64,000 nt of DNA from Octopus sinensis. Its lineage: Eukaryota. A program made the position numbers and the translations under genes. Shown here one piece after another: positions 11,101-58,912 of this stretch. The number at the start of each line of letters is the position of its first letter. Position 1 is the stretch's first letter. The stretch lies in NCBI RefSeq assembly GCF_006345805.1, contig NC_043005.1, positions 12,710,001 to 12,774,000 on the forward strand, given 5' to 3'. Under the pieces are notes generated by a model. It worked only from the letters and a program-made list of their open reading frames with translations. It ran no database searches and was not told where the DNA came from.

Positions 11101-12141
11101 TCAAGTCATTTAGTTCAGTGATATCACTTTTTTTTGTTTCAGTGTGGCTAGTTCAGTGACGGCTAGGTTTATGCTGTTTATAATAGGTGTTGTTATTTCG
11201 TTTATTTTGATTCTTGGGAGGTATGGTCGGTGGTCCATTTTGAGCTCTGTGGTTTTCAGTTCTTTGATTATTTTATTTTTTATATTATCATAATCATTAG
11301 GCTCCCCTTCGTTGTTTACATCGTGTTTGTTGGGAATGTTGCGTTTGTCTTCGTGTTTTACAGTTTCAGTGTTTATATTATTGGGCATTGTTGTGTGGCT
11401 TCTATCTACATTTTCCTGGTGTATGTTTTCTTTTAGGTGTTCTATTTCTATTTCTGATATTTTTTTTGTGTTGAGAATGTATCTTCGTACGTTAGCTAAT
11501 TTATTAGGGTTCATTGCTGTATCCAAGTCTATATCTCTATTATTTTCCTTCCATATTTTATATGTATGTGTTGTTGTATTTTCATTTTTTGGGTAGAGTA
11601 CTGCTGTGAAGTATGCGTGTAAGATAGAAATGTATTCCTCACGTGTCCATTTACGTCTTTTGGGTTTTATTTGCGGGACATGAGGTACAACGTCCGGCCC
11701 ATTATTTTGACGGTCGTCATTTTCGTAGGGTACCGGTCCGTTTATTTCTGTTGTCACATTATTTCGCACGTGTAGTTTTTCGTACATTTTTTGTTGTAAG
11801 TTTAATGTACGTACCGCTCGATTGTTATTCTTGGGTTGAATAGTATCGGTGGCATTTAATTTCTTCGTAGTTCCTTTGTACATGGTGTTTGGGGTCGGGG
11901 ATGATCGTGATGTTCCACGCATGTTTACATGTGTTGCGTTAGAGGTGGAGATGATATCGAGTCAAAATACATCATTTTGTTTCGAAAATAGTAATAAATT
12001 TCAATTAGTATTACTTACTCGGATACAGTCCAATTCTTTGTTAGTAAAACTTTGGCTCCATAGGATGTCCTTGTTTTCGATGTTTGTGGATAGATTTCGG
12101 AGCTCTGAATTTTCCCTCTTACATCTTAAACGTCCCCCGGT

Positions 12142-12143
<2 letters not shown>
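8190..12143 (-). mobile_element. Near full-length R4/Dong-clade non-LTR retrotransposon (RLE type), copy B
   Basis: Single long ORF region with ~220 nt 5' UTR and ~100 nt 3' UTR; bounded by (TAA)n arrays on both sides (8113-8189 and 12144-12220). Confidence 0.93.
8287..11922 (-). pseudogene. R4/Dong ORF (~1200 aa): Myb-like, reverse transcriptase, CCHC knuckle, restriction-like endonuclease; broken by several frameshifts
   Basis: Myb-like KRRKWTREEY (ORF 11110-11922); RT motifs YGCKDQL, DYKKAFDSIPH, GIFQGDTLSPLLFCLAL, HLLYMDDLKLY (9660-10340); CRICGDGQETINHIISSC and RHD, then IDVSIP..KY RLE motifs (8287-8976). Confidence 0.92.
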
Positions 12144-12208
<65 letters not shown>

Positions 12209-12220
12209 CATTATTATTAT

Positions 12221-12712
12221 CGCCTTTGCACAACTTCTAACACTGGAGAAGTACTATGGTGTCAGCTGTTCACTACCAGTGAACTAAGGTAACACCTCTT
12301 ATTTTTCGATCACCTTCCGGAGCATTCGAGCGGTTCCATGCAGTGATGTTTTCTGCAAGTGCTCCAACTTTATTGAAGCCCGTATTTGTTTCACATACTT
12401 CTCGAGATTTTTGCTCACTGTTTCCAGGACTCCGAGAATTATTGGTACTACTACCACCTTTTTCATCAACCATAACTGCTTAACTTCCCAAGCTAACCTG
12501 TCATATCCCTCAACTTTTCTTTCTTCCTCATCACATTCCTTGGTGTCACCTGGGCATGCTATATCTATGACGTAGCAGAGTTTGTTTTCTTTCCCAATTA
12601 AGACTATGTCTGGTTTCCTATTCTCTATCTCATGGTTGTAATGAATCATAAAATCCCACAGGATCTTTGCTTTATCATTTTCGATGCTACTTTCGGGTTT
12701 GTGGTCGTACCA
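12221..12712 (-). mobile_element. R4-clade 3' fragment (RLE domain) of a divergent family
   Basis: WYDHKPE..ILWDF..RKPDIVLI..VIDIACPGD..LQKTSLHGTARMLRKV; flanked by (TAA)n at 12144-12220 and 12713-12758. Confidence 0.9.
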
Positions 12713-12864: not shown

Positions 12865-13080
12865 GTATAATACTAAGGCGGTGACTTGGCAAAATCATTG
12901 GCACGATGGCCGAACTGCATAGCGGTATTTCGTCCGTCTTTTTTTCCTGAGTTCAAATTTCACTGAGGTCGACTTTGCCTTTCATCGTTTCGAGGCCTAT
13001 AAAATAAGTGCCAGTTTAGTGAGTAACCGACTAAATCTCTCCCCCAGATTTCAGGCAGTGTGTCTATAATAGAAAATATT
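12865..13080 (+). mobile_element. Older SINE S2 (tail A)
   Basis: Diverged head and GAGGTCGACTTTGCCTTTCATC core, ending ..TTTCAGG..CTATAATAGAAAA. Confidence 0.75.
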
Positions 13081-13817
13081 TGTTTCTTTATTACCCACAA
13101 GTGGGCTAAACATAGATGGGACAAACAAGGACAGACAAACGGATTAAGTCGATTACATCGACCCCAGTGCTTAACTGGTACTTAATTTATCGACCCCGAA
13201 AGGATGAAAGGCAAAGTCGACCTCGGCGTGATTTGAACTCTGAACATAACGGCAGACGAAATACGGCTACGCATTTCGCCCGGCGTGCTAACGTTTCTGC
13301 GAGCTCGCCGCCTTGTATGTATATATGTATATATATTTCTTTATTACCCACAAGGGGCTAAACATAGAGGGGACAAACAAGGACAGACAAACCGATTAAG
13401 TCGATTACATCGACCCCAGTGCGTAACTGGTACTTAATTTATCGACCCCGAAAGGATGAAAGGCAAAGTCGACCTCGGCGTGATTTGAACTCTGAACGTA
13501 ACGGCAGACGAAATACGGCTACGCATTTCGCCCGGCGTGCTAACATTTCTGCCAGCTCGCCGCCTTGTATGTATATATATATATATATTTCTTTATTACC
13601 CACAAGAGGCTAAACATAGAGGGGACAAACAAGGACAGACAAACGGATTAAGTCGATTACATCTACCCCAGTGCTTAACTGGTACTTAATTTATCGACCC
13701 CGAAAGGATGAAAAGGCAAAGTCGACCTCGGCGTGATTTGAACTCCTCTGAACGTAACGGCAGACGAAAAACGGCTACGCATTTCGCCCGGCGTGCTAAC
13801 GTTTCTGCCAGCTCGCC
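13081..13817 (-). mobile_element. Three tandem full-length copies of tRNA-derived SINE S2 (tail B)
   Basis: About 250 bp period; head GGCGAGCTGGCAGAAACGTTAGC, B box GAGTTCAAAT; one outer 17-bp direct repeat CTATAATAGAAAATATT at 13064-13080 and 13817-13833. Confidence 0.92.
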
Positions 13818-17065: not shown

Positions 17066-17304
17066 AAATACCTATTTCTTTACTACCCACAAGGGGCTAA
17101 ACACAGAGAAGGCAAACAAGGACAGACAAACGGATTAAGGCGATTATATTGACCCCAGTGCGTAACTGGTACTTATTTAATCGACCCCGAAAGGATGAAA
17201 GGCAAAGTCGACCTCGGCGGAATTTGAACTCAGAACGTAACAGCAGACGAAATACGGCTACGCATTTCGCCCGGCGTGCTAACGTTTCTGCCAGCTCGCC
17301 GCCC
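17066..17304 (-). mobile_element. SINE S2 (tail B)
   Basis: Full head, core and tail, followed by GGTATTT, the start of a second unit. Confidence 0.9.
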
Positions 17305-26725: not shown

Positions 26726-27038
26726 CAATAATCCCGCGCCATATCGCGGTTCCCCTATCGCAGTTCACCTACACCTGTTTATTAAAGCTTAAGTCAATTC
26801 CTCCGTGGTGTTGTTTTGCATTTATATAATGACATAAATATATACAAATCAGGCGCAGGAGTGGCTGTGAGGTAAGTAGCTTGTTTACGAACCATATGGT
26901 TCCGGGTTCAGTCCCACTGCGTGACACCTTGGGCAAGTGCCTTCTACAATAGCCTCGGGTCGACCAAAGCCTTGTGAGTGGATTTGGTGGACGGAAACTG
27001 AAAGAAGTCCGTCGTGTATATATATATATATATATATG

Positions 27039-27110
<72 letters not shown>

Positions 27111-27431
27111 TGTGTTGTGTGTGTGTTTGTCCTCCGAACATCGCTTGACAACCGATGCTGGTGTGTTTATAACCCCCGTAACCTCGCGGTTCGGCAATAG
27201 AGACCGATAGAATAAGTACTAGGCTTACAAAGAATAAGTCCTGGGGTCGATTTTCTCAACTAAAGGCGGTGCTCCAGCATGGCCGCAGTCAACTGAGTGA
27301 AACAAGTAAAAGAGCAAATCACAAAAAAAAAAATTTTTTTTCAAATATACAGGGCTGTTCCTACTTCGTGGATTTTCACCTATCGCGGGGGATTTTGGAA
27401 CGTAACAACCGCGATAGTCGAGGGATTGCTG
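26726..27431. mobile_element. Tigger/pogo-like MITE with a SINE inserted
   Basis: TA|CAATAATCCCGCGCCATATCGCGG left end and CCGCGATAGTCGAGGGATTGCTG|TA right end are imperfect TIRs with a TA duplication. Confidence 0.65.
26851..27315 (+). mobile_element. SINE S1
   Basis: AGGCGCAGGAGTGGCTGTGAGGT A box, GGTTCAGTCCC B box, same body and tail as other S1 copies. Confidence 0.9.
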
Positions 27432-27497: not shown

Positions 27498-27725
27498 TGA
27501 CGGCGAGCTGGCAGAGCCGTTAGCACGCCGGGCAAAATGCTTATCCGCATTTCGTCTGTCGCTACGTTCTGAGTTCAAATTCCGCCGTTGTCGACTTTGC
27601 CTCTTATCCTTTCGGGGTCGATAGAATAAGAACCAGCTGAGCCCTGGGGGTCGATGTAGTCAACTAGCCTCCCCACCCCGATCCTTCTCAGAAATTTCAG
27701 GTTTTGTACCTATATTAGAAGCGAT
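27498..27725 (+). mobile_element. SINE S2 (tail A) with 17-bp TSD
   Basis: ATTATAACTTTGCTGAA at 27478-27494 and 27724-27740. Confidence 0.88.
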
Positions 27726-27953
27726 TATAACTTTGCTGAACACCTTAAAGATGTTCCCTTGTGGATGGGAAAAAATAAACTGTTTTTGTTCAGAAAGACA
27801 ACTTAGACTAACAAGAGGAAATAAAGGACTGCCATATGTTTACTGCTGTTGTGAAGATTACTTCATGTCATGAAATTTAGTCCTTCAAAGGGGTGAAATA
27901 CTTCTTTCCTTAGTGCAGCAGTGAGAATTTCCATTAATAAAATGTATGAATGT

Positions 27954-28352
27954 AGGCGTAGGAGTGGCTGTGTGGTAAATAGCTTGTTTACAAACCATAT
28001 GGTTCCGGGTTCAGTCCCACTGCGTGGCACCTTGGGCAAGTGCTTTCTACTATAGTCTCGGGTCGACCAAAGCCTTGTGAGTGGATTTGGTAGACGGAAA
28101 CTGAAAGAAGCCCGTCGTATATATGTATATATATATATATGTGTGTGTACATGTTTGTGTGTCTGTGTTTGTCGCCCCCAGCATCGCTTGACAACCGATG
28201 CTGGTGTGTTTACGTCACCGTAACTTAGCGGTTCGGCAAAAGCGACCGATAGAATAAGTACTAGGCTTACAAAGAATAAGTTCTGGGGTCGATTTGCTCG
28301 ACTAAGGGCGGTGTTCCAGCATGGTCACAGTCAAATGACTGAAACAAGTAAA
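27954..28352 (+). mobile_element. SINE S1
   Basis: Full-length copy colinear with 26851-27315. Confidence 0.9.
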
Positions 28353-37668: not shown

Positions 37669-38490
37669 GAAATAGAAATCCGTTGGAAAAAACAAAAACA
37701 GAACAGAGGCGGAGCAAAACAAATCGAACGAGGCTCCTAAGAGCCCATGGCCAAACTGTTTATCAATGTATGTTGAAAACGGGTGGTGGGTGCGTTGAAG
37801 ATTTTAACAGGTCAGGCAGCGGTCATTCCGGTGGGTGAGAGCACGGGGTGCTTAGATGTTCTTTGTGACCGAGACTAAAGTTCTGACTATTTAAAGAATA
37901 TTAGGTGTATATATAGAGATATATATATAATATATATATATAGATATATATAACATTTGTACATGTTGATTTCCACAAATTTAAGTAAAACATTCATATC
38001 ATCACTATCGCTGTTCTTGGACAGTCTGCAAAGAGCCTGTGCACTGCTCATTGCTGCAGATCCAACAAGGAAAAACAAAAAACTTACAACTTAATCTACA
38101 CTACGTAAACGTTGATGAATTCTCGAGAATAGTAGACTATGTGTGCACTTGATATATAATTGTTACAGTAATACCTAGAGAAGAGAAAAGAAGAAGGAAA
38201 AGAAAAGAAGAAGCAAGAAGAAGAAGAATAAGAAGAAGAAGAAGAAGAAGAGAAGAACAAGAGAGAAGAAAAGAAGAAGAAGAAGAATAGAAGAGAAGAA
38301 GAAGAAAGAAGAAGAAGAAGCGAAAAGAAGAAGAAGAAGAAGAAGAAGAAGAAGAAGAAGAAGAAGAATTCAAATCTAAGCAAAAACTGGAGCAACAGAA
38401 TACCATGATAACACGATGGCCAGAAGAACCTTGACATGGCAAATCCTGGGATAAGCTAAACAGAAAATATATAAACAAATAGAAATATAT

Positions 38491-38722
38491 ATGGCGGCGA
38501 GCTGGCAGAAACGTTAGCAGGCCAGGCGAAATGCTTAGTGGTATTTCGTCTGTCGCTACGTTATGAGTTCAAATTCCGCCGAGGTCGATTTTGCTTTCAT
38601 CTCTTTCGGGGTCGATTAAATAAGTACCAGTTTCGCACTGAGGTCGTTATAAACGAATTAATCCGTTTGTCTGTCGTTGTTTGTCCCCTCTATGTGTAGC
38701 CCCTTGTGGGAAATAAAGAAAT
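38491..38722 (+). mobile_element. SINE S2 (tail B) inside the decayed R4 copy
   Basis: Full head, core and tail. Confidence 0.88.
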
Positions 38723-38855
38723 AAGAAAATATATTAACAAAGTAAAATCCGAACAATGTTTGAGAAGGTAGGACTCTCAGCAGGGACTGAAGGATTTTAT
38801 TTGTAGCACAATATCAAAGCCTCCTCACCAGAAGCCACCAAAAACCACCAGAAAC

Positions 38856-39536: not shown

Positions 39537-39740
39537 CTTTATTTCAGTCATTTGACTGTGGCCATGCTGGAGCACCGCCTTTAGTGGAGGAAATCGACCC
39601 GAAGACTTATTCTTTGTAAGCCTAGTACTTATTCCATCGGTCTCTATTGCCGGATCGCTAAGTTACGGGGACATAAACACACCAGCATCGGTGGACAAGC
39701 GATGTTGGGGGACAAACACAGACACATAAACATGCACACC

Positions 39741-39776
<36 letters not shown>

Positions 39777-39948
39777 CATATACACGACGAGCTTCTTTCG
39801 GCTTCTCTCTACCAAATCCACTCACAAGGTTTGGGTCGGACCAAGGCTATAGTAGAAGACACTTGCCCAAGCTGGCACGCAGTGGGACTGAACGCGGAAC
39901 CATTCGGTTGGTAAGCAAGCTACTTGCCACACAGCCACTCCTGCGCCT
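39537..39948 (-). mobile_element. SINE S1 inside the decayed R4 copy
   Basis: Full-length reverse copy splitting the RLE domain. Confidence 0.9.
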
Positions 39949-41415: not shown

Positions 41416-41528
<113 letters not shown>

Positions 41529-41641
41529 GATAGATAGACAAACAGACAGACAAACATACAGACAGATTGTTAGACAGACAGACGACAGACAGCAGCAGCC
41601 AGACAGACAGACAGACAGACAGAACAGACAGACAGACAGAC

Positions 41642-41692
<51 letters not shown>

Positions 41693-41694
<2 letters not shown>

Positions 41695-42078
41695 TGTTTC
41701 TTTATTAGCCACACAGGGCTGCACACGATAGAACAAATTACAAGGTAGAGCTTTTCTTTTGAAGGTATTAAAAAAAAAAAAAAAAAAAAAAAAAGGAAGG
41801 GGGAGGTTCGATCAAAAGGGATCGTAAAAGGAGAGAAGAGGACAAAAATAAGGGGGGTTAAAAAAAAAAAAAAGGGGGGGGGGAGAGGAAAAAAAATGAT
41901 CAATAGGGATCGTTATCACAGAAATGTCAATATGAAGTGTAAAGGGGAGGACAGGTGAGGTTTACCCGTGGAAAGAAAAGCCTGCCGAAAAGACCACGGT
42001 AACCTCGGTCAATGAAGTCACATTTTATATTTCTTTTTTTTTTTTTTTTTTTTTTTGCAAATAAGCAACTCTCAAGCA
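41693..42078 (-). mobile_element. Tx1 3' UTR-only copy
   Basis: Near-identical to 43204-43590; tail continues into (GATA/GACA)n at 41460-41692. Confidence 0.9.
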
Positions 42079-42131
42079 AATAGATAGATAGATACATAGA
42101 TAGATACATAGATAGATACATAGATAGATAG

Positions 42132-42906
42132 ATTTCTCTATTCGCCACGTTGGTGCATTCGAGTGGTCGACTCGGTACCTGTCAGACAGCTGAAAGCGTC
42201 TGAGCAGGTCTCTGAGGCATTTGCATTCCCGTCTATTCCTTTTTCTGCCCACGTAGTCTACACGTATGTCCAAGGTTGCACCCCCCCCCCTAATAGCAAA
42301 GGACGAGAGGTTCCTAGGAATAGTTCTAGACTCGAAAGAAATCCGCCCGACCTGTTAAAGGCGGTGCGTACAATGACATGAGTCGTAAAGTGCACCCATT
42401 GCTACCGTCGACATCTAGGATAGCCAGTCTACCCTCCGGGTCTACGAATATTGTCATTACTTTGAGATCCAGACTCTTGCGAAAAAGTACCGTGGTGCCA
42501 CTACCGCCCATTCTCGGCAGATAGGGAGAAAATAAATGTTAAACTGTCCGCCAAACATGGACTTTAGGGCTCGTGGATTATGGAGAGTGGTCTCACTTAT
42601 GGCTATGATTTCGAACTTGCGTGACATTTAAGAGGTACCCTTGTTTCCAAGGGAACCCCATCCACGCGCATTTCACACAACCAATCTTGATCATAATCCT
42701 AGTTAATTAAAAGCCAAACGAAAGGAACAGAGGGTTAGTTACTGCTCGAAAGTTTTTGCTTTCTCCTCCTTTGGTTTGTCGTCGAGGAGATCCCAATACA
42801 GTTTCTTTGTAAGATATTTTTTGGCATTTACCAACCGCACTGAGGAGAATGCCTTTTAGTGTGTGGTGCCGATTTTGTGAGATGTGTAGTATTTGAATGT
42901 GATCCG
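42132..42906 (-). mobile_element. Internal Tx1 fragment (ORF1 end and ORF2 start)
   Basis: Homologous to ~46490-47230 (RLAILDVDGSNGCTLRLMSLYAPPLTGRADFF); (GATA)n on both sides. Confidence 0.88.
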
Positions 42907-42969
<63 letters not shown>

Positions 42970-43010
42970 GGATGGATGGATGGATGGATGGATGGATGGA
43001 TGGATGGATG

Positions 43011-43049
<39 letters not shown>

Positions 43050-43091
43050 GGATGGATGGATGGATGGATGGATTGATGGATGGATGGAATG

Positions 43092-43130
<39 letters not shown>

Positions 43131-43165
43131 GGATGATGGATGGATAGAGGATGGATGGATAGATA

Positions 43166-43204
<39 letters not shown>

Positions 43205-43542
43205 TGTTTCTTTATTAGCCACACAGGGCTGCACACAGATAGAACAAATTACAAGGTAGAGCTTTTCTTTTGAAGGTATTAAAAAAAAAAAAAAAAAAAG
43301 GAAGGGGGAGTTCGATCAAAAGGGATCGTAAAAGGAGAGAAAGAGGACAAAAATAAGGGGGTTAAAAAAAAAAAAAAAAAAAAAAGGGGGGTGGGGGAGA
43401 GGAAAAAAAAAATGATCAATAGGATCGTTATCACAGAAATGTCAATATGAAGTGTAAAGGGGAGGACAGGTGAGGTTTACCCGTGGAAAGAAAAGCCTGC
43501 GGAAAAGACCACGGTAACCTCGGTCAATGAAGTCACATTTTA

Positions 43543-43577
<35 letters not shown>

Positions 43578-43611
43578 CAAATAAGCAACTCTCTGTTTTC
43601 GATTTCTGGGT

Positions 43612-46600
43612 TCATAGGACTATGCTCAAGGTGGCTTCGTCATTCATACGTGCCATTCTTGCTACATTCACCCATCTTTTTTTAAACATTCGCTAGACAA
43701 AACTTGCCTCTCTACTCTCACTTCCTTTTCAAGTGGTACTTGAAGAAGTTGATGAGAGATTGACCAGAGAGGAAAGTGTTTTGTCTCCAATCCTTTCAGA
43801 CGCGTCCACCAGATACATTCTTTCGCCATAGCCACAAGGATGATGAAAATAGCTCTTCCTTCCCGTTTGAAGGAAGGAGGCGTGACAATATTGACGATAG
43901 ACTCAGCTGATAAACCGACTCGTCCCACACGTGACAGCAGTTGTTCGACATAAGCCCACAGGTCGGAAATTGTTGGACACTGAACGAGTGCGTGCAGAAC
44001 GGTTTCGTCGCTCTGACCGCATCTCGGGCAGGTCGGCCCCGTGTTTCTCGAGCCGTGTCTGTAGAGCTTATCCCGAACGGTAGCGCTTCTCGGTAGCACT
44101 GCCAGGCCAGGGATCTCTGGAAGTTGTCCATGGGCCCTGGCCCGAAAGTCGTCCCGAACAGGCGGGTCAGGTACTCCTCGTCGACGTCCAGGTTCGCCCC
44201 GAGCTCGTCGTCGTACCCTCCTCCACTAAACCCCTATAGAATGCTTTGGTTGTGTTGAAGTCACTTAAGGTCGACCCAGGACGGCAGAGTTGCTTGAGAG
44301 CAACGCGACACTCGCGGTGCCATTCGCCCTTCCTCGGCCTCTTTTTGATCCACGACTGCAGTTCGGTCATGGAGACGAGCTGCGGGAAAGCGTGCCTCAC
44401 AAACGGCGACCACACCTGTTCACCGTCGTCTACATAGAGCCAGAGATGTCGCAGTCTCAGCGCGTGTCTGCGCATCATCAACCACGGCATGCCCAGCCCT
44501 CCTTTTAACGGGTGTTGACAGCAAATGGATCGCCTGACCATCGGGACGCATCCTTTCCACAAGAAGCGAAAGAGGATGCGTTGTAGTTTGGTGATGGTAG
44601 GGTCGGGACAAGGTACGACGGTCAGGCGGTAGTAGATGACGGACGCGATGTACGTGTTCGCCACCTCCGCTCGACCTTTTAGGGACAGTTTCCTCTCGGC
44701 CCATTGCCGGGCGAGAGTGACCACCCTACTCGTTATCTCGTTCCAGTTCTTCTCCACTTGGAGGTCCGGACCAAACCAGACCCCGAGCAACTCAACCGGG
44801 CCGTCGGTCCAGCGTCCCACGACGGAGGCGCTGGTGGACGGCATGGCTTGCTTCTCTTCTCCAGGTGCCTAGTCGCAAGCCCACTGACTTTTCCCGGTTG
44901 ATTTTCGCTCCTGTCACCGCTTCGTAGTTTTTCAGTGTCTCGCCGACCAGCTCGATGTGCTCGTGGCTAGACACTATGACGGTGACGTCGTCCGCGTATG
45001 CAGACACGCTCGTCCCGCATCCCAATTCTCGCGGGATGCCCCTTAGAGTCGCCAGCTTCCGCAGTAGTGGCTCAAGAGTCAATACGTATAGAAGCGCCGA
45101 GAGGGGGCATCCCTGACGGACCGAACGTGCAATGTCGAAAGGTCTCGATAGATGTCCATTTACGCGAATTACCGAACGGATGCCTCTGTACAAGGCAGCT
45201 ATCCAGCCGCGGAAGACGGGACCGAAACCAGCCGCTCTCAGGACTGCCTCCAAGTATCGATGGTCTACCCTATCAAAGGCTTTTGATTGATCCAAGTTGA
45301 TCAGGGCCCCACCCATGCCAGGTTCGTTAACTACCCTGTCTATGATGTAGCGCATCAGATGGAGGTTGTCATGGATGGTCCGGCCTGGCACGGCGCATGT
45401 TTGCGCCTTGTCGACCAGTTTCTCGATGACAAGCGCCAACCTCTTGGCTAGCACCTTGGCCAAAATTTTCAAGTCTGCATTAAGCAGAGTGATGGGCCTA
45501 AAGTTATCTATTACATTTCCCTTGTTTAGATCTTTCTTCAGCAGTGTTACGGCTCCTCGGCTCACAAAACCAGGAATGCTCCCGTTTTGCTGCCAGTTGC
45601 AGTACACCGCCGCCAAGAGATCTCCAAACAAGTCTGGCATACAATTGTAAAGCTCGTAGGGTAGACCATCCAAACCCGGTGATTTGTCCCTCGAGCATTC
45701 TGCCATCGCTTCCCGCACTTCCGCCGCCGTGATGGCACCTTCGCAGCACCCTGCCTTTCTTGTCGAGAGTCGTGGTAGGCTATGTAGGTAGGCACTGAAG
45801 TCCACCCTACGTTCTTGCCCTCCACTCGTTCCGAACAGTCGGGCAAAATGCTGCTGAAAGGCCTCACACATTTTACTTGGCTCGAGCAATTCGCGCCCCT
45901 GTTCATCTACCAGTGACCGAATGGTGGCTTTGTTGCCCTGTTGCGCCTCTGCCACCCGGGCCTCTCTCGCGGCTCCAACACCTTCGTTCCTTAGAGCACG
46001 CATCCTAGCTCTGACAGCACATCCTTCGTGTTTGGCGTTGAAGTGTTGGTCGAGGGCCAACCTCGCCGCCAAAACGTCGGATGCGATGCCGCTTCTAATT
46101 GCCTCTTCTAGCTTCTTAACTAGCTCACCCTCTACTCTATTTCTATCTATGGCTAGTGCTTTGCTGTACCTAATCGCTTCTGCTTTTACTGCTCTCTTGA
46201 GGGCAAACCACCATTTGTTGTTGTTGATGATGGCTCCCGTCAAAGCCCTCTTTACTAGTGTGCTAATCCGGTCTCTGAAAACTTGTCTCGATGGGAAAGA
46301 CGCGTTTAGTTTCCAGTATCCGGGACCCTGCCTAAGTGTCTTACCTAAGTCTAGCGTACATGTCACAAGTTTGTGATCCGTGTAGCTGACTATGTGGAAT
46401 TGTGGACATCCTATGCTATCTCTATCTACTGTCCTACACAGTATCCTATCTAGATACGATCTCGACGACCCGATGCGGTTGCTCCATGTCCACGTTGGCG
46501 CATTCGGGTGGTCTAGTCGAAACCTGTCAGACAGTTGAAAGCGTCTGAGCAGGTCTCTGAGGCATTTGCATCCCCGTCTATTCCTATCTCTACCCACGTA

Positions 46601-47051
46601 GTCTACATGCGTGTCCAAGGTAGCATTCCAATCCCCCACTAAGAGTAAAGGACGAGACGTTCCCAAGAAAACTTCTAGACGTTGAAAGAAATCCGCCCGA
46701 CCTGTTAAGGGCGGTGCGTAAACTGATACGAGTCGAAAAGCGCACCCATTGCTGCCGTCGACATCCAGGACGACCAGTCTACCCTCCGGGTCTACGAATA
46801 TTGTCCTTACATTGAGATCCAGACTCTTGTGAAAAAGTACCGCGGTGCCACTACCGCCCATTCTCGGCAGACAGGGGGAAAAATAAATGTTGAACTGTCC
46901 GCCAAACATGGTCTTTAGGGCCCGCGGATTGTGGAGTCTGGTCTCGCTTATGCTATGATTTCTAACTTATGTGACTTTATGTCATTTAAGAGGTACCCTT
47001 GTTTCCAAGGGGACCCAAGCCACGCGCATTTACACAACCAATCTTGATCAT
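43612..47051 (-). pseudogene. Tx1/L1 ORF2 (~1140 aa): AP endonuclease, RT, C-terminal Zn finger; a few frameshifts
   Basis: MIKIGCVNARGL start at 47051; VSVYAP, LVGDWNA, SYLDRIL, YTDHK (APE); DKSPGLDGL, NFRPITLLNAD, DQSKAFDRVDH, VRQGCPLS, AYADD (RT); CPRCGQSDETVLHALVQC. Confidence 0.92.
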
Positions 47052-47082
47052 AGTTCTAATGAATTAGAATACAGAGGGTTAC

Positions 47083-47982
47083 TTACTGCTCGAAAGTTTT
47101 TGCTTTCTCTCCTCCGTTGGTTTGTCCTCGAGAAGATCCCAGTACAGTTTCTTTGTGAGATATTTTTTGGCATTTACCAACCGCACTGGGGAAAATGCCT
47201 TTGAGTGTGTGGTGCAGACTTTTGGAGATGTGTATTATTTTGATGTGGTCTGGTGGTGTTGTGTATGGGTGGTTGTTTGTTTTTATGTCATCTTCTGTTA
47301 TGTTTGTTTTTGATTGGATGTATTCCATCAAATTTGTGTTTTGGTGTCTATGGCTGTGAGCATGTTTGCTGTATATGTTTTTGTGGTGTTGGTGTGGCTG
47401 TTGTTTGCGTGGGTTTTGAAATGTCTTCGGGAGATGTATTTCCCCTGCTTTGTTTCGTGTTTGCATTTGGTTTGGTTGTGTTTCTCTGCTCTTTATTTTC
47501 CTTCTTTTGTAGCTATTTGCCATTCCTCACTGGTTTCGTCTTCCGACGAAATTTCTGAGGAATCAGAAGGGGGTAGGGGTATGTTGTGGGCTTCTATGTA
47601 TGTCTGTGTAAGTGGTTGTGTTGTTGTTTTTTTCGTTGTTGTTGGTTGTTGAGTGTTTATGTGTGTTGATGCGGTATAAGGGATGGGGGATCAGTTTGTG
47701 TGTGTTTTCTTTGTTTTTTTGTTTTCTGTTCCTTTGGGTTTTGCTGTTGATGGTAGTGTTGGTATTTTTCCAGGTGTCGAGTGGTTTTTGGTTGATGACG
47801 GATTAGCTTGGTGTGCTTCTCTTGTCCTTCTGTGTTGATGGTGGTGGTGGGGTAGTAGAGCTTTTTTTCCGGAGTGCTTTGGTTGTGGTAGTGGTTTGTT
47901 GTTTTGCTCTTGGTGTGCAGTGGTTGGGCACGTCTTTTTCAAGTGTGTTTTCGCTTCCACACAAATAGCAGCGTGGTCGCCT
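47083..47982 (-). pseudogene. Tx1 ORF1 C-terminal remnant: CCHC zinc knuckle plus T/K/Q/P-rich linker
   Basis: The first bases read RPRCYLCGSE(fs)HLKKTCP = CX2CX4HX4C; C-terminal [25 protein letters not shown] is conserved in the copy at 42750-42870. Confidence 0.75.
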
Positions 47983-48067
47983 AGATAGATAGGTTGGTAG
48001 GTAGTTGTAGGTAGGTGGTATGTATGTATGTAGTAGTAGGTAGGTAGGTAGGTATTAGGTAGGTAAG

Positions 48068-48142
<75 letters not shown>

Positions 48143-48251
48143 GTTGGTAGGTAGGTTGGTAAGGGTTAGGTAAGGTATGTATGTGTAGAGTAGGTAGGTA
48201 GGTAGGTAGTAGGTAAGTAGGTAGGTAAGTAGATAGATAGATAGAATAGAT

Positions 48252-48310
<59 letters not shown>
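47983..48310. repeat. (GATA)n/(GGTA)n compound microsatellite
   Basis: Visible periodicity; 5' flank of the Tx1 element. Confidence 0.95.
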
Positions 48311-48319
<9 letters not shown>

Positions 48320-52365: not shown

Positions 52366-52824
52366 AGGCGGAATTTGAACTCGGAACGTAGCGGTAGACG
52401 AAATACCTATCTCTTTACTACCCACAAGGGACTAAGCACAGAGAGGACAAACAAGGACAGACAAACGAGTTAAGTCGATTATATCGACCCCAGTGGGTAA
52501 CTGGTACTTAATTTATCGACCCCGAAAGGATGAAAGGCAAAGTCGACACCGGCGGAATTTGAACTCAGAACGTAACGGCAGACGAAATACCTATTTCTTT
52601 ACTACCCACAAGGGACTAAACACAGAAAGGACAAACAAAGACAGACAAACGGGTTAAGTCGATTATATCGACCCCAATGGGTAACTGGTACTTAATATAC
52701 CGACAACGAAACGATGAAAGGCAAAGTCGACCTCGGCGGAATTTGAACTCAGAACGTAACGACAAACGAAATACCACTAAGCATTTCGCCCGGCGTGCTA
52801 GCATTTCTGCCAGCTCGCTGCCTC
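52366..52824 (-). mobile_element. Multimeric SINE S2 (head plus about 2.2 units)
   Basis: Units joined by AAAGAAATA|GGTATTTCGTC. Confidence 0.88.
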
Positions 52825-54352
52825 GTCAAAAGCGTATATTATAAATAGAAAGTCGTACTCACTCAACTGAGTTTGAGACAGGAACTTATTTTATTAGTAT
52901 AGCACCATTACGGACTGTCGAGCATAGTATATGATTTTATAAAAACTGTAGCATATTTCGATAATTAAATTTTTGAGGTGAATGGTATAAATAGTAAGAC
53001 AATTCCCTTGAGAAGATTAATAGCAAGACAGTGTTTCGTTTGCTTTTAATACAAATTTCTCTGGCAAAATAATAAATATTGGTTTCTTTACATTCAGCAC
53101 AAAGATTGACCTGCTATTTAGCAGAGGCATAAATAGGGATATTGCAATGTGTATACATTATCCAAAGTTATGATTGGTTTCTATGTGAACTGACATTGTT
53201 TTAGCCAGAGATTGAAATCACAGTTCCATCGTGTCAGATAATTACCAACCGCTTTGTTGCATTCGCAAAAATAGAAATTGATACAGAAAGAAAGAATTTA
53301 AGAATTGCTCTTAATTTTAATTTACAATTTGTTCATCTGTAGGGCTTCTCATAGGACCACAATCATTTGTAACCTCTTTCTAATGTTATAATTGAGATTC
53401 AATATACAGTTTTAGTTATCCATTACTCAAGTTCCTCTTCTGATAATATTTTAATTTGCATTTCAATCTGGTAGAATAAACGAAAGTTACCAATTCATTG
53501 ATAGGAATCCTTTCTTTGTTACGTTTTCCTAATTGATACACCTGAAACAGTTCGCAGAGTATATGACTTTTGACATAGAAAAGAAAACCTAGAAACTCTT
53601 CATTTGAATAACCATTGTGGGAATTCTTAGAGACAGTATCCTTCTATGCAGAAAATTATATGATGAAAGGTTATATACAACCATGCAGGGTTGTACGAAG
53701 ATTTCAGATGTAGGAATCAGGAGAAACTTATATGATAAGTCAGAATTGCAGGAATCAAAGGATCAGATACGAATATAGCATGAAAGGGAATGTAAAAGAA
53801 GCCATATTCGAACTAAAAGTTTTAGAGTTTGGAAACTGAAAGATGAAATCAACGCTGAAAGACAGAATCAAGTTTTGTGTTATATTTGGAGAGGAAGGCA
53901 ACCATTCTGTTTTTCAGACCAGGCATAATTATGATGAATCAGTGTTTATATCTTCCTCAGAGTCACGAGTGTTCTATGTGAATCAAATTTGTTTTAAAGA
54001 GAAGTCGAAACCAAGTTGAGCAAAATGCGCCTTAAAAGCTACACATATTTTCATAGAATCAAGGAGTACTCTCTCATCCCAGTTCCTCAGATAGAAAACT
54101 GTAATTTTCTTATTCCATTGCTCCCCTACCAAAAGGTCCTAGAATGGTTACCCTTATTTCGTGCTTTAGAAAGTGTATTTTAACTATTACAAGCCAGCCT
54201 TCATATTTCGGCCCTACTTCCTTCCCTAATTATTGTTTCTAATTTGTTCATTACCTTCCCACTCTACTGTATTTTTCTTAATCCTTATTTACTAAACATT
54301 ATCGACCATTCAGAGCACCCCACTAGTGGCTATCGACAATATTCTGGTCATC

Positions 54353-54755
54353 AAGACGGCGAGCTGGCAGAAACGTTAGCACGCGGGGCGAAATGCGTAG
54401 CCGTATTTCGTCTGCCGTTACGTTCTGAGTTCAAATTCCGCCGAGGTCGACTTTGCCTTTCATCCTTTCGGGGTCGATTAAATAAGTACCAGTTACGCAC
54501 TGGGGTCGGTGTAATCGACTTAATCCGTTTTTCTGTCCTTGTTTGTCCCCTCTATGTTTAGCCCCTTGTGGGTAGTAAAGAAATAGGTATTTCGTCTGTC
54601 TTTATGTTCTGAGTTCAAATTCCGCCGGTGTCGACTTTGCCTTTCATCATTTCGGGGTCGATAAATTAAGTACCAGTTACGTATTGCGATCGATCTAATC
54701 GACTAGTTCACCTCCCAAAAAATTTCTGGCCTTGAGCCTAGAGTAGAAAAGAACA
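54353..54755 (+). mobile_element. Composite SINE S2: tail-B unit joined to a headless tail-A unit
   Basis: Junction AAAGAAATA|GGTATTTCGTC at ~54580-54597. Confidence 0.85.
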
Positions 54756-55354
54756 TTCTGCTCAACAGCTACCTAAATAATTCATTATTCCGGACGCTGT
54801 AGGCATCTTGCGAGTAAAGAAGTATGAAGACTACAGTAGAGGGTTACTTTTTATGAGTTATTTCTTACTCGATAGTTGAGAACACACTTTGTGGGTTCTG
54901 TTAGCGATGGGTTGGAATTGTTGATACCTTAACATCGACCTAACAAGTACTTTATCACCAGATGGTGGATGTTTTTTGTCGATATCAGCGCATTTGGGAA
55001 AACCAGTGGGTATCTGTTATTTGGAAATGTGCAAAACGTTTTTATAAAACCTCTCATATTAACATATCCACACAGTTGAAACATGCGTTTAAAATGCCAT
55101 TTCAGTCTCCCACTGGCGCTAAAGAGCCGGACGTTTTCAAGCATCGTTGTTGGCGCTTGAAGGCATCCAATCGCCAGTCCCGGATGAAGCATAGTGGGCC
55201 ACTAGTCTAAAATCGCTGCCCATTTCCAGAGACTTACCCCCTCGACCTCAGTATATCGTTTGTACTTCGAGGCCCAAACGATTTGGGAAACAACACGACC
55301 ATCCTGCAGCCTGAGCTTAGGAGATACGTACAAATCCTAATTATTGAAGATTAG

Positions 55355-55699: not shown

Positions 55700-57140
55700 A
55701 TATCGCACCTGTCACGGGAGCTACGGTCTCACTGATGACTACAATATTCATATCAACTAACCTGCAGTCATTGGGCAATTTACCTTTTTTCCGAATTGAT
55801 CCCTGCTTGCCTGCTACTACAATGATACGCTCTTTCAACTCTCCTATTACTGTCCCAAATCCTTTCTATTTGACTAAGTATCTTTTCTGGAGGGAAGATT
55901 TGCATCTTGAGCTTCCTAATTTGTTTGTTTTCCAGGCTTCTATTCTACTGTCTTCAACTTTTGTCATTTCCTTTCCACATTTGCTCTTTTTTCATCTTTC
56001 TTTGTGAGATATCTAATCTTTCTCCTGACTTCTATCCCTCCTGCATAGATAAATAAGTTAACATCTTCTATATTTTTACTATCTATCCTACTGATAACAG
56101 AATCTACTTTCCTAGATATTTCTAGCAGTTTCTTTCTATTAGTAGTGCCTCTTACTGCTGGCAATCTATTTCCTGCAACTCCTCTAAAATCTTCTGATCT
56201 TCCTCACTTAAACCACTTAAGTCGTTGGTGCTAGTTGTCCCTTTCTTATTGGTAGTTCAATTATTATTATTTTTTTTTCTTTAGGTTCTTCTTTGGTTTG
56301 AGCTGTATCTCTTTTGCAGTTGTTTGCCTTTCCTACTGCCTGATCTTTCTTCTCCAGTTCTCTTGTCATCTCTTCTGCTTCCAATTTTCTGTCGTCTACT
56401 TTCTTCTCCTAATAGCATTACCTTGATCAACTAATCCCTGCTCAATCACTTTAAACATACTCAAAGTGTGAACATCCGTTTTCTATACACTCCCTCTTTT
56501 ACTCTTTTACTTGTTTCAGTCATTTGACTGCGGCCATGCTGGAGCACCGCCTTTGATCGAGCAACTCGACCCTGGGACTTATTCTTTTGTATGCCCAGTA
56601 CTTATTCTATCGGTCTGTTTTGCCGAACCGCTAAGTAACGGGGACGTAAACACACTAGCATCGGTTGTCAAGCAATGCTAGGGGGACAAACACTGACACA
56701 CAAACACACACACATACACATATATATATATATATATACATATATACGACAGGCTTCTTTCAGTTTCCGTCTACCAAATCCACTCACAATGCATTGGTCG
56801 GCCTGGGACTATAGCAGAAGACACTTGCCCAAGGTGCCACGCAGTGGGACTGAACCCGGAACCATGTGGTTGGTATGCAAGCTACTTACCACACAGCCAC
56901 TCCTGCGCCTTCGTTTTTCTAAGTAGCACTGCATCACTATCCTCTATCCTGTTTTCTTCGCTGGTCCACTTCCTCATCCTTATTCTATTGTTTGCTGATG
57001 ATGTATTAGGATAACAGCTGCGTTCAGTCTGCATCTTCACTGAACCACTGCCGAACGAGAGGCCTTCTCTCAAAGGTCCAGCTTCATTTTCGCCACTACA
57101 ACCAGAGTTTCTTAGGAAATTCCTCTCTCATAAACTGACG
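55700..57140 (-). mobile_element. Decayed R4-clade 5' portion (Myb and pre-RT region), interrupted by a SINE
   Basis: RKWTSEENRI Myb-like motif (~56990); PAVRG..RKKLLEISRKVDSV..NLFIYAG (55964-56164) resembles the pre-RT region of copy B; 5' side abuts (TAA)n at 57166. Confidence 0.7.
56495..56910 (-). mobile_element. SINE S1 inside the decayed R4 5' region
   Basis: Full-length reverse copy. Confidence 0.9.
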
Positions 57141-57390: not shown

Positions 57391-57711
57391 AGCTTCTAAT
57401 TTGGCAAAAGGTTAACCAATTTTGAGAGTAGAGTCGTTCACGATAACATCTACTTCAGTAGTTTGACCTACAATTTTATTATCGACCTCATAAGATTGAA
57501 GTGACCGCAAAGAGCCGGAACATATGCTGGAAGTCTTTTTGTCCGAATTACTAAATATTCTGTGAAATAATAATGAGCGTTAACCCAAGGCGAGACTACA
57601 AACACTGATGGTATATCTGAGAATCCCATTATTTTAAGAGTATCGTTGATTTTGTTAAAAACACAAGAATAAAATGGCACCAATTTGCTGATGGCCCTAC
57701 AATGCAAATAT

Positions 57712-58680
57712 CTATTTATTTACTACCCACAAGGAGCTAAACACAGAGAGAACAAACAAGGACAGACAAACGTAACGGGTACTTAATTTATCAACCCCGA
57801 AAGGATGAAAGGCAAAGTCAACCTCGGCGGAATTTGCACTCAGAGCGTAAAGACACACGAAATAGCTATTTCTTTACTACCCACAAGGGGCTAAACACAG
57901 GGGAGACAAACAAGGACAGACAAACGGATTAAGTCGATTATATCGATACCAGTGCGTAACTGGTACTTAATTTATCGACCCCGAAAGTATGAAAAGCAAA
58001 GTCGACCTCGGCGGAATTTGAACTCAGAAGGTAACGGCAGACGAAGTACCTATTTCTTTACTACCCACAAGGGGGTAAACACAGAGGGGGACAAATAAGC
58101 ACAGACAAACGGATTAAGTCGATTACATCGAACCCAGTGCGTAACTGGTACTTATTTAATCGACCCCGAAAGGATGAAAGGCAAAGTCGACCTCGGCGGA
58201 ATTTGAAGTCAGAACGTAACGGCAGACGAAATACCGTAAGGCATTTCGCCCGACGAAGTACCTATTTCTTTACTACCCACAAGGGGGTAAGCATAGAGGG
58301 GGACAAACAAGCACAGACAAACGGATTAAGTCGATTACATCGACCCAGTGCGACACTGGTACTTATTTAATCGACCCCGAAAGGAGGAAAGGCAAAGTCG
58401 ACCTCGGCGGAATTTGAACTCAGAACGTAACGACAGAGGAAATACCTATTTCTTTAGTACCCACAAGGGGGTAAACATAGAGGGGGACAAACAAGGACAG
58501 ACATAGGTATTAAGTCGATTACATTGACCCCCAGTGCGCAACTGGTACTTAATTTATCGACCCCGAAAGGATGAAAGGCAAAGTCGACCTCGGCGGAATT
58601 TGAAGTCAGAACGTAACGGCAGACGAAATACCGTAAGGCATTTCGCCCGGCGTGCTTAAAATTCTGCCAGCTCGTCGCCT
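57712..58680 (-). mobile_element. Five-unit tandem SINE S2 array (about 190-230 bp units)
   Basis: One full head at 58680, then four headless or partly headed units sharing the same junction. Confidence 0.9.
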
Positions 58681-58912
58681 TTAGCCAGATATATAAATAT
58701 CTATAACTAAATACTCTGAAGAATCTATTCTAGCACGCAACTGATTTTAGCATAGAACCGTTCTTAATGTTTGCGTGTTTGCTTGTATACATGCATTTAC
58801 GCACTTATACATGTGCACATGACACATAAAAATATAACTGTATGTATGTATATATTTGCATGTGTACATATGTGCGCTATCATTATATTAGGGAAGCTGT
58901 ATTGTCTGATTC

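What the first reader, a model, noticed from the sequence alone, without database searches (positions are those of the whole stretch)
43204..43265. SINE S2 tail B matches the 3' end of the Tx1 LINE: candidate stringent SINE/LINE pair
LINE end (minus strand): CCTTGTAATTTGTTCTATCTGTGTGCAGCCCTGTGTGGCTAATAAAGAAACA. S2 tail B: CCTTGTTTGTCCCCTCTATGTTTAGCCCCTTGTGGGTAATAAAGAAA(T/C)A. They are colinear over ~50 nt and both keep a small hairpin (AGCC..GGCT versus GCCC..GGGT) just before AATAAAG; the copy at 13081 even ends GAAACA. Older S2 copies have a different tail, so tail B was acquired. Established: shared 3' tails indicate stringent LINE recognition, common for L2/CR1/RTE but unusual for the poly(A)-reading L1/Tx1 group. 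Inference: a Tx1-family machine drives this abundant SINE through a 3' stem-loop.
Basis: partly seen in the sequence, partly recalled or inferred. Interest (0 to 1): 0.8.

Follow-up and report, generated by a model that had tools for sequence, protein, structure and literature searches.

The report
Octopus SINE carries a LINE's tail
An abundant octopus SINE ends in a roughly 45-60-base tail copied from the conserved 3' end of an L1/Tx1-like LINE lineage, which makes that lineage its likely driver; SINE/LINE pairs of this kind are well known but rare for L1-type LINEs.

Summary
The last ~50 nt of the minus-strand LINE ending at 43205 align with tail B of SINE S2 at 76% identity. The alignment score is 40, against 14±2.4 for dinucleotide shuffles (0 of 20,000 reach it).

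Related LINEs fetched from Octopus sinensis and Argonauta hians have the same 3' end and match tail B better, at 89% and 83%. The last 26 nt are 78-92% identical among five LINE families, while the rest of their 3' UTRs is at background (45-54%). Tail B therefore comes from a conserved LINE terminal module. The donor is more likely a sister family than the window's own copy.

S2 insertions end exactly at AAAGAAA(T/C)A, with target-site duplications (TSDs) and no poly(A). Argonauta SINEs carry the matching local tail.

Three cautions apply:
- The 'Tx1' label is only partly tested. L1-superfamily membership is shown, and microsatellite targeting, tandem arrays and a CCHC-type ORF1 fit Tx1, but I ran no reference phylogeny.
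- The hairpin is only 3-4 bp with one compensatory swap, and its folding energies are no better than shuffles.
- The window LINE sits in (TATC)n microsatellite, whereas S2 does not.

Verdict: a genuine SINE/LINE common-tail pair, a new member of a known kind, of moderate interest.

The parts
43204..43265 (-). 3' terminal tail of LINE-A: ...CCTTGTAATTTGTTCTATCTGTGTGCAGCCCTGTGTGGCTAATAAAGAAACA, with the first T of (TATC)n at 43204
   Evidence: aligns with S2 tail B at 76% over 50 nt, 0 of 20,000 shuffles reach the score
43205..47980 (-). LINE-A, a near full-length L1/Tx1-like non-LTR retrotransposon. The copy is degenerate: ORF2 is broken into three reading-frame pieces, the first ~66 aa of the endonuclease are not recognisable, and there is no clear ORF1
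   Evidence: tblastn with P0003 aligns aa 67-1108 to 46849-43710; Pfam finds Exo_endo_phos, RVT_1 and zf-RVT
43668..46909 (-). ORF2 pieces of LINE-A (46909-44792, 44844-44167, 44099-43668), carrying AP-endonuclease, reverse transcriptase and C-terminal zf-RVT domains
43205..43667 (-). 3' UTR of LINE-A (about 463 nt, rich in low-complexity A/T/C runs)
   Evidence: homologous to the 3' UTR in locus L132
42907..43204 (.). (GATA)n/(GGAT)n microsatellite abutting the 3' end of LINE-A; it reads (TATC)n on the LINE strand
47982..48319 (.). (TAGA)n/(TAGG)n microsatellite abutting the 5' end of LINE-A
41695..42075 (-). 5'-truncated second copy of LINE-A (3' UTR only, 92% identical to LINE-A) with the same tail at 41695-41745, flanked on both sides by (ATAG)n
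   Evidence: (D13)
41418..41694 (.). (ATAG)n microsatellite 3' of the truncated LINE-A copy
42134..42906 (-). 5' part (5' UTR plus endonuclease aa ~56-187) of another LINE of the same group, lying between two (ATAG)n blocks and ending ...GTGGCGAATAGAGAAA(TCTA)n
13076..13817 (-). Three head-to-tail S2 tail-B units (13076-13326, 13329-13580, 13581-13817), flanked as one block by a 17-bp TSD AATATTTTCTATTATAG. The last unit ends ...GGGTAATAAAGAAACA directly at the TSD
17073..17303 (-). S2 tail-B copy (AGTAAAG variant)
38479..38723 (+). S2 tail-B copy ending ...AATAAAGAAATA directly at an 18-bp TSD AGAAAATATAT(A/T)AACAAA
52367..52826 (-). S2 tail-B array: one nearly full unit, one 184-bp unit and a partial unit
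54352..54585 (+). S2 tail-B unit, joined at S2 position ~65 to a tail-A unit (54587-54760)
57708..58681 (-). Array of five S2 tail-B units (mostly 184-bp units covering S2 positions 65-247)
12866..13076 (+). Older S2 copy with tail A (78% identical to the S2 query); the 13076-13817 trimer is inserted in its tail
27501..27720 (+). Older S2 copy with tail A

Best explanation
Tail B of SINE S2 (the last ~45-60 nt, ...TGTCCCCTCTATGTTTAGCCCCTTGTGGGTAATAAAGAAATA) was copied from the 3' end of an octopod lineage of L1-superfamily, Tx1-like LINEs. It replaced an older tail A.

These LINEs carry a conserved ~26-nt terminal module, GCCCTTGTGGCYAATAAA(A)GAAAT. The module is followed, depending on the family, by nothing, by (ATT)n, or by (TCTA)n/(TATC)n.

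The most likely mechanism is classical common-tail parasitism. The ORF2 protein of a LINE of this lineage binds the terminal module on S2 RNA. The closest tail I found is in the O. sinensis family at locus L129, not in the microsatellite-resident copy in the window. The protein then starts target-primed reverse transcription exactly at ...AAAGAAA(U/C)A, giving poly(A)-less SINE copies with 8-18-bp TSDs.

Status of each step:
- Shown: the homology, its significance, conservation of the LINE tail, precise 3' ends with TSDs, and the direction of transfer (LINE to SINE).
- Inferred: that this LINE lineage mobilises S2, and that recognition is sequence-specific ('stringent').
- Weakly supported: that a small stem-loop (G.U/GC-CG-CG stem, loop CUUGU) just 5' of UAAUAAAG is the recognised feature.
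For: 1. Significance of the match. The window LINE tail against S2 tail B scores 40, against 14±2.4 for shuffles (0 of 20,000). The only non-S2 blastn hits of S2 in the window are the two LINE-A tails.

2. Independent LINE copies have the same end after their ORF2:
- O. sinensis L129: ...TATTGTCCCCCTCTATGTTTGGGCCCTTGTGGCTAATAAAGAAAT
- Argonauta L128: ...CGTCCCCTCTATGTTTTTGCCCTTGTGGCTAATAAAAGAAATA(ATT)n
- Argonauta L002: ...GCGCCCATGTGGCTAATAAAGAAA(TCTA)n
- JGI L131: ...GGGCCCTTGTGGCCAATAAAAGAAATC(ATT)n
The scores of S2 tail B against L129, L128, L131 and L002 are 65, 59, 36 and 34; none of 5,000 shuffles reaches any of them.

3. Selective constraint. The last 26 nt are 78-92% identical between the five LINE families, against 45-54% for positions -61 to -230 of the UTR. 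The ORF2 C-termini of these families are only about 47-71% identical.

4. Direction of transfer. Only the S2 tail (positions ~205-247) matches the LINEs; the S2 body does not. Tail-A S2 copies are more diverged than tail-B copies.

5. Precise poly(A)-less ends. At 13081 and 38723 the TSD starts directly after AAAGAAA(C/T)A.

6. Parallel case. Two Argonauta SINEs with an S2-like body end ...GGCCCTTGTGGCTAATAGAGAAATCTAT, which matches the Argonauta LINE end including the start of its (TCTA)n.

7. Stem. 90.8% of cells are paired, against 24-53% when partners are slid. Pair 22-33 is GC in the LINEs and Argonauta SINEs and CG in S2. L131 turns the closing G.U pair into G-C.

8. LINE identity. Pfam finds APE, RVT_1 and zf-RVT. 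The relative P0003 hits human L1 ORF2p at 9e-63, against 1e-27 for R2.
Against: - The window's own LINE-A is flanked on both sides by (TATC)n and ends in it, as does its truncated copy. No S2 copy in the window lies in or ends in that repeat, so LINE-A and S2 do not share a target pattern.
- The better-matching LINE families were seen only as single copies in other species' assemblies. I could not show that an active copy exists in the genome the window comes from.
- The stem is only 3-4 bp. RNAalifold gives -2.84 kcal/mol. Single-sequence z-scores range from +0.45 to -2.0, and a longer UCUAUGUUU/AAUAAAGA helix is no better than shuffled 5' arms.
- The invariant AATAAAGAAA could also be conserved as a polyadenylation signal for the LINE's own transcript.
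- No experiment or genome-wide census was possible with these tools.
Confidence: 0.7

Rival explanations
1. Historical capture without present function. Tail B was picked up from a LINE RNA by template switching, but S2 tail-B copies are mobilised by another LINE (octopus genomes hold active RTE, CR1 and Dong-R4 families), or recognition does not depend on the tail.
For: Recently active insertions are reported for LINEs of several clades in O. vulgaris (PMC13282606). S2 targets differ from those of the window LINE. No functional data exist.
Against: The terminal 26 nt are selectively conserved across LINE families. All 15 tail-B units in the window keep the module. S2 ends exactly at the LINE-type terminus. 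Argonauta SINEs track the local LINE tail. S2 had another tail before, so the swap coincides with the younger, more numerous subfamily.
Confidence: 0.17
2. Reverse direction. The LINEs acquired their terminal module from the SINE, or the LINE ends are merely S2 fragments inserted downstream of the LINEs.
For: In principle, recombination between SINE and LINE RNAs can go either way.
Against: The module sits at the same place, at the end of the 3' UTR, in five LINE families from at least two genera. It appears without any S2 body sequence and is followed by family-specific terminal repeats. The S2 tail nests within LINE tail diversity. Older S2 copies lack it.
Confidence: 0.05
3. Chance or convergence. 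The two ends look alike only because both contain a poly(A)-signal-like AATAAAG in T/C-rich sequence.
For: About a quarter of the identities fall in AATAAAGAAA.
Against: None of 20,000 dinucleotide shuffles reaches the score. Similarity extends about 35-45 nt upstream of AATAAA in L129 and L128. The other L1-like LINE in the window, which has AATAAA near its end, shows no match. A 17-mer from the tail found only unrelated chance sites in metagenomes, none with upstream similarity.
Confidence: 0.02

Closest known systems
[quoted passage not shown] 2014, PMC4176376)
   Same: A tRNA-derived SINE shares the last tens of nucleotides with a LINE. The LINE tail is conserved, there is no poly(A), short terminal repeats follow the tail in some LINE families, and a stem-loop lies next to the end.
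   Different: Those LINEs belong to the L2 clade and have a well-defined, experimentally required stem-loop. Here the LINE is L1/Tx1-like, the stem is only 3-4 bp, and nothing has been tested experimentally.
Maize/sorghum ZmSINE2 and ZmSINE3 with LINE1-1_ZM, and a green-algal pair (Ohshima 2012, PMC3472496; PMC3747384)
   Same: An L1-clade LINE has a conserved 3'-end sequence shared with SINEs, which argues for specific recognition within the L1 group. [quoted passage not shown]
   Different: Those are plant and algal L1 lineages with a 'solid' RNA structure. This case is in an animal (octopod), in a Tx1-like branch, with a weak structure.
Tx1-Mar LINEs and SINEU in crocodilians (Kojima 2015, PMC4494074)
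   Same: A Tx1-clade LINE is proposed as the driver of a SINE family.
   Different: That link rests on a shared target (the Mariner-N4_AMi transposon) and shared snRNA-derived 5' heads, and SINEU ends in poly(A). Here the link is a shared unique 3' tail, and the targets are not shared with the window LINE.
Microsatellite-specific Tx1-clade LINEs: Kibi (TC)n, Koshi (TTC)n, and crocodilian Tx1 in (TTCC)n/(TTTC)n (Kojima and Fujiwara 2004, as cited in PMC4494074)
   Same: LINE-A, its truncated copy and a third LINE fragment all sit in one orientation inside the same tetranucleotide microsatellite. A 45%-identical relative forms perfect head-to-tail arrays (L003).
   Different: The repeat here is (TATC)n/(TCTA)n. 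Sister families end in (ATT)n or in no repeat at all. Clade membership was not tested by phylogeny.

Membership tests
SINE/LINE common-tail ('stringent') partnership | SINE and LINE share a non-poly(A) 3'-terminal sequence beyond chance | tested here: met
   76% identity to the window LINE, 89% to O. sinensis L129 and 83% to Argonauta L128; no shuffle reaches the observed scores.
SINE/LINE common-tail ('stringent') partnership | The tail is conserved within the LINE lineage relative to the rest of the 3' UTR | tested here: met
   the last 26 nt are 78-92% identical between five families, against 45-54% upstream.
SINE/LINE common-tail ('stringent') partnership | SINE copies end precisely at the tail, without poly(A), and are flanked by TSDs | tested here: met
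   a 17-bp TSD follows ...AAAGAAACA at 13081 and an 18-bp TSD follows ...AAAGAAATA at 38723. None of the 15 units has a poly(A) tract.
SINE/LINE common-tail ('stringent') partnership | A conserved RNA stem-loop in the tail, supported by covariation | tested here: inconclusive
   a 3-4 bp stem, 90.8% of cells paired, and one GC to CG swap (a single event); energies are no better than shuffles.
SINE/LINE common-tail ('stringent') partnership | The LINE protein mobilises the SINE in trans, dependent on the tail | not testable with these tools
   Requires a retrotransposition assay.
L1 superfamily (L1/Tx1 group) of non-LTR retrotransposons | ORF2 with an N-terminal AP-endonuclease, an RT and a C-terminal Cys-rich zinc domain, and closest similarity to L1 ORF2p | tested here: met
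   One search finds Exo_endo_phos, RVT_1 and zf-RVT. In one search the relative P0003 hits human L1 ORF2p at 9e-63 over aa 3-856, against 1e-27 for R2.
Tx1 clade | RT-domain phylogeny places the element with Tx1 references rather than L1 proper | not tested
   No Tx1 reference sequence could be obtained. The three homologue searches returned no Tx1-named protein. Supporting context only: L1-Tx1 is the only L1-type group among the LINE groups listed in the two octopus/cephalopod repeat papers consulted (PMC13282606, PMC8967140).
Tx1 clade | Target-specific insertion (repeats, multicopy genes, microsatellites), often giving arrays | tested here: met
   three LINE pieces in one orientation are separated and flanked by (GATA)n; the relative at L003 forms a head-to-tail array with a 6484-bp period. 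Caveat: L129 lies in a minisatellite without (TATC)n.
Tx1 clade | ORF1 of the RRM/zf-CCHC type, not the Transposase_22 type of vertebrate L1 | tested here: inconclusive
   the 732-aa ORF1 of the relative at L003 has a sub-threshold zf-CCHC hit (19.6 bits, cut-off 20.8) and no Transposase_22 hit. The window copy has no recognisable ORF1.

The most novel reading that the evidence does not exclude
A 26-nt terminal RNA module defines a sequence-specific ('stringent') branch of Tx1-like LINEs in octopods, and this branch powered the octopus-specific SINE expansion. Within the branch, the short repeats that follow the module ((TATC)n, (ATT)n or none) would set where an element lands, either homing to a microsatellite or inserting dispersed. 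A SINE that took the module without the repeats would have escaped homing and spread genome-wide. Its frequent head-to-tail arrays, joined at a fixed internal site, could be a further by-product of this machinery.
Probability: 0.3. Interest if true: 0.7.

Novelty: new member of a known kind. Interest (0 to 1): 0.5.

Why it matters
SINEs are among the largest repeat classes in octopus genomes (11.6% of the O. vulgaris genome, PMC13282606; about 40% of repeat content, PMC8967140). In the papers I could search, their LINE partners are not described. Naming a partner lineage gives a concrete, testable account of how that expansion was driven.

[quoted passage not shown] That bears on whether specific recognition was the ancestral state of the L1/Tx1 group.

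Tried and rejected
1. Metagenome scan. I searched JGI metagenome contigs for TGTGGSTAATAAAGAAA. It returned at least 120 loci, all chance matches with no upstream similarity to the tail, so it added no cephalopod copies.

2. Tx1 or L1 label from database names. Three homologue searches, one with a 16-sequence profile, returned almost no names and none mentioning Tx1 or LINE-1. The supplements of two papers held no reference sequences. Clade assignment therefore rests on features, not on a tree.

3. A longer stem pairing UCUAUGUUU with AAUAAAGA looked attractive in minimum-free-energy folds. Shuffled 5' arms pair just as well in seven of the nine tails tested, so I dropped it as evidence.

4. 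The end of the fragment at 42134 (...GTGGCGAATAGAGAAA(TCTA)n) looked like another tail. However, it lies inside endonuclease coding sequence, so I do not count it as a tail.

5. More distant relatives (45% identity; L003, L005) do not carry the module, so the module is specific to the octopod sub-lineage.

6. L130 has a diverged end, and the contigs of L126 and L132 stop before the tail. One lookup (P0079) found nothing.

7. ARAGORN calls no tRNA in the window. The tRNA-like origin of the S2 head rests on box A and box B-like motifs read by eye.

Full report
**What is at the coordinates**

It is followed by (TATC)n, which is the (GATA)n block at 42907-43204 on the plus strand.

Upstream on the same strand lies a degenerate but nearly full-length non-LTR retrotransposon, which I call LINE-A.
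- Three reading-frame pieces (46909-44792, 44844-44167, 44099-43668) carry AP-endonuclease, RVT_1 and zf-RVT domains.
- They align with aa 67-1108 of a 1143-aa relative.
- A 463-nt 3' UTR follows. The element starts at about 47980, directly after another (TAGA/TAGG)n block at 47982-48319.
- A second, 5'-truncated copy (41695-42075, 92% identical) has the same tail and is again flanked on both sides by (ATAG)n.

So the quoted sequence really is the 3' end of a LINE, not an accident of this one copy.

**The SINE**

S2 has a tRNA-like head (GGCGGCGAGCTGGCAGAA...GAGTTCAAATC), a body, and one of two tails. Blastn with one copy finds 15 tail-B units at six loci, plus four more diverged copies or partial units with tail A. 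The quoted tail B is exact for the copy at 13329-13580, and the copy at 13076-13326 ends GAAACA.

**Is the similarity more than chance?**

Yes.
- The local alignment covers 50 columns with 38 identities. It scores 40, against 13.9±2.3 (LINE tail shuffled) and 14.8±2.6 (SINE tail shuffled), and none of 20,000 dinucleotide shuffles reaches it.
- In the 64-kb window, the only non-S2 blastn hits of S2 are the two LINE-A tails.
- A second L1-like LINE in the window (about 8112-12300, ending in (AAT)n) shows nothing.

**Evidence from elsewhere**

Protein searches with LINE-A's ORF2 and with the C-terminus of its closest relative found octopod homologues. I fetched the DNA around them. Four independent LINE loci show the same terminal module after their ORF2.

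| Locus | Source | 3' end |
|---|---|---|
| L129 | Octopus sinensis CM016876.1 | ...TATTGTCCCCCTCTATGTTTGGGCCCTTGTGGCTAATAAAGAAAT |
| L128 | Argonauta hians | ...CGTCCCCTCTATGTTTTTGCCCTTGTGGCTAATAAAAGAAATA(ATT)n |
| L002 | Argonauta hians | ...GCGCCCATGTGGCTAATAAAGAAA(TCTA)n |
| L131 | JGI sample | ...GGGCCCTTGTGGCCAATAAAAGAAATC(ATT)n |

S2 tail B matches L129 at 89% over 47 nt (score 65) and L128 at 83% over 54 nt (score 59). Both are clearly better than LINE-A at 76% (score 40). No shuffle reaches any of these scores.

Only the S2 tail matches these loci, never the S2 body.

Between the five LINE families, the last 26 nt are 78-92% identical. Positions -27 to -60 are 45-74% identical, and the rest of the UTR is 45-54%, which is the background for this kind of alignment. 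The ORF2 C-termini of these families are only about 47-71% identical. The terminal module is therefore under constraint in the LINEs, and S2's tail nests within their diversity.

Tail-A S2 copies are older than tail-B copies (78-88% against 87-96% identity to the query). Together with the points above, this fixes the direction of transfer: S2 replaced its tail with a LINE tail.

**A parallel case**

The Argonauta locus L128 also holds two SINEs with an S2-like body. Their tails end ...GGCCCTTGTGGCTAATAGAGAAATCTAT. That is the LINE module plus the first unit of the (TCTA)n that ends the Argonauta LINE at L002. The partnership is thus not peculiar to one genome.

**How S2 copies end**

Two insertions have clear TSDs: a 17-bp AATATTTTCTATTATAG around 13076-13817, and an 18-bp AGAAAATATAT(A/T)AACAAA around 38479-38723. 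In both, the duplication starts directly after AAAGAAA(C/T)A. No unit has a poly(A) tract. Reverse transcription beginning at a fixed nucleotide of a unique tail is what is expected of specific recognition, not of poly(A) reading.

**What kind of LINE**

The full-length relative P0003 matches human L1 ORF2p at E=9e-63 over both the endonuclease and the RT, against 1e-27 for R2 proteins. With the zf-RVT domain, this places the group in the L1 superfamily.

Several traits fit the Tx1 branch:
- Three LINE pieces lie in one orientation inside a single tetranucleotide microsatellite at 41418-48319.
- A relative forms a perfect head-to-tail array with a 6484-bp period.
- That relative's 732-aa ORF1 has a sub-threshold CCHC knuckle hit and no Transposase_22 domain. 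This is the pattern the literature associates with Tx1 (PMC5203782; PMC4494074).
- L1-Tx1 is the only L1-type group named in the two octopus/cephalopod repeat papers consulted, with 13 recently active families in O. vulgaris (PMC13282606; PMC8967140).

I could not obtain Tx1 reference proteins, so the label is plausible but not tested by phylogeny.

**The hairpin**

All tails can form a small stem just 5' of UAAUAAAG. It is G.U/G-C/C-G/C-G around the loop CUUGU in L129 and G.U/C-G/C-G/C-G in S2.
- On a 19-sequence alignment, 90.8% of cells pair, against 24-53% when partners are slid. One pair is GC in the LINEs and Argonauta SINEs but CG in S2. That swap is a single event inherited by all S2 copies.
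- L131 converts the closing G.U pair to G-C.
- LINE-A itself forms the stem only in a register shifted by one base.
- RNAalifold keeps only 3 pairs at -2.84 kcal/mol. Single-sequence z-scores run from +0.45 to -2.0. A longer helix with AAUAAAGA is no better than shuffled 5' arms, except in the Argonauta SINEs.

The hairpin is compatible with the data but is not established. Recognition of primary sequence, or a role of AAUAAA in 3'-end formation of the LINE transcript, would explain the conservation equally well.

**A discrepancy to keep in view**

LINE-A and its truncated copy live in (TATC)n and end in it, whereas no S2 copy does. The sister families end in (ATT)n or in no repeat, and L129 lies in a 31-bp minisatellite. 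So the likely driver of S2 is a family other than LINE-A. The repeat after the module may be what steers each family to its target; that last point is inference only.

**Comparison with what is known**

Common-tail SINE/LINE pairs are classical for the L2, CR1 and RTE clades. For the L1 group they are rare but described, in maize, sorghum and a green alga (PMC3472496). A Tx1-clade LINE has been proposed as the driver of the crocodilian SINEU, but on the basis of shared targets and heads, and SINEU has poly(A) tails (PMC4494074). Microsatellite-homing Tx1 elements (Kibi, Koshi) are also known.

In the papers I could search, I found no description of an octopus SINE sharing its tail with an L1/Tx1-like LINE. 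Repbase and Dfam entries could not be checked.

**Verdict**

This is a real and well-supported SINE/LINE common-tail pair, and a new member of a known kind, in an unusual LINE group and in a genome where SINEs matter. The specific claims 'Tx1', 'this LINE' and 'through a stem-loop' are, respectively, plausible, probably wrong in detail, and unproven.

Noticed in passing
window 13076-13817; 52367-52826; 54352-54760; 57708-58681: S2 tail-B units often sit in head-to-tail arrays. One is a trimer of full units (252-bp period) bounded as a single block by one 17-bp TSD. The others are arrays of 184-bp units (S2 positions 65-247) joined at ...AAAGAAATAG|GTATTTCGTC, a junction that reads as a palindrome (GAAATA GG TATTTC). 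Identity within an array (89-96%) is barely above identity between arrays (83-95%), so these are not recent local duplications. One possibility is repeated insertion at a fixed internal site with homology-mediated 5' joining.
   Followed up: partly
window 54352-54760: A tail-B unit is joined, at the same internal point (S2 position ~65), to a unit carrying the older tail A. It looks as if a tail-B S2 had inserted into a resident tail-A S2.
   Followed up: no
window 41418-48319: Three LINE pieces lie on the minus strand, each separated and flanked by (GATA)n-type microsatellite: 41695-42075, 42134-42906 and 43205-47980. This is the layout expected for a microsatellite-homing LINE, here in (TATC)n.
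   Followed up: partly
window 42134-42906: A LINE fragment holds only the 5' UTR and the first half of the endonuclease. It stops inside coding sequence at ...GTGGCGAATAGAGAAA(TCTA)n. That end differs at two of 22 positions from the Argonauta L002 LINE terminus (GTGGCTAATAAAGAAATCTATC) and shares the AATAGAGAAATCTAT ending of the Argonauta SINE tails. I could not tell whether it is a broken LINE, an internal-deletion derivative or a coincidence.
   Followed up: partly
window 8112-12300 (minus strand): A second L1-like LINE (RVT_1 and zf-RVT; only 23% identical to P0003 in the RT) ends ...CTATAAAAATAAAACTACTG(AAT)n. A piece of an unrelated RT-coding element lies just downstream, at about 7000-8100.
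   Followed up: partly
L003 (ENA ERZ25071366 ctg14421c): A relative 45% identical in protein forms a perfect head-to-tail tandem array with a 6484-bp period (ORF1 732 aa, ORF2 1143 aa). Its 3' end lacks the octopod module.
   Followed up: partly
L128 4700-5170 (Argonauta hians): Two SINEs have an S2-like body and LINE-type tails ending AATAGAGAAATCTAT. Their tails fold into a notably more stable stem (-11 and -14 kcal/mol) than the Octopus ones.
   Followed up: partly
protein P0079: A protein labelled 'MAG: zinc-binding domain-containing protein [Herbaspirillum sp.]' is 71% identical to this octopod LINE ORF2 C-terminus. It is probably host DNA binned into a bacterial MAG.
   Followed up: no
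window 27949-28347, 56511-56910, 39539-39948, 26851-27305: Another abundant SINE (CORE-like, with an internal TA/TG microsatellite) shares a body module with S2 (...GTCGAT..AATAAGTAC.AG...GGGGTCGAT...TCGACTAA) but has a different tail.
   Followed up: no
window 13081, 17073, 57708 and array junctions: The sequence immediately 3' of several S2 tail-B insertions begins (R)TATTT (AATATTTT, GGTATTT, GATATTT). This may be a nick-site preference. There are too few independent events to judge.
   Followed up: no
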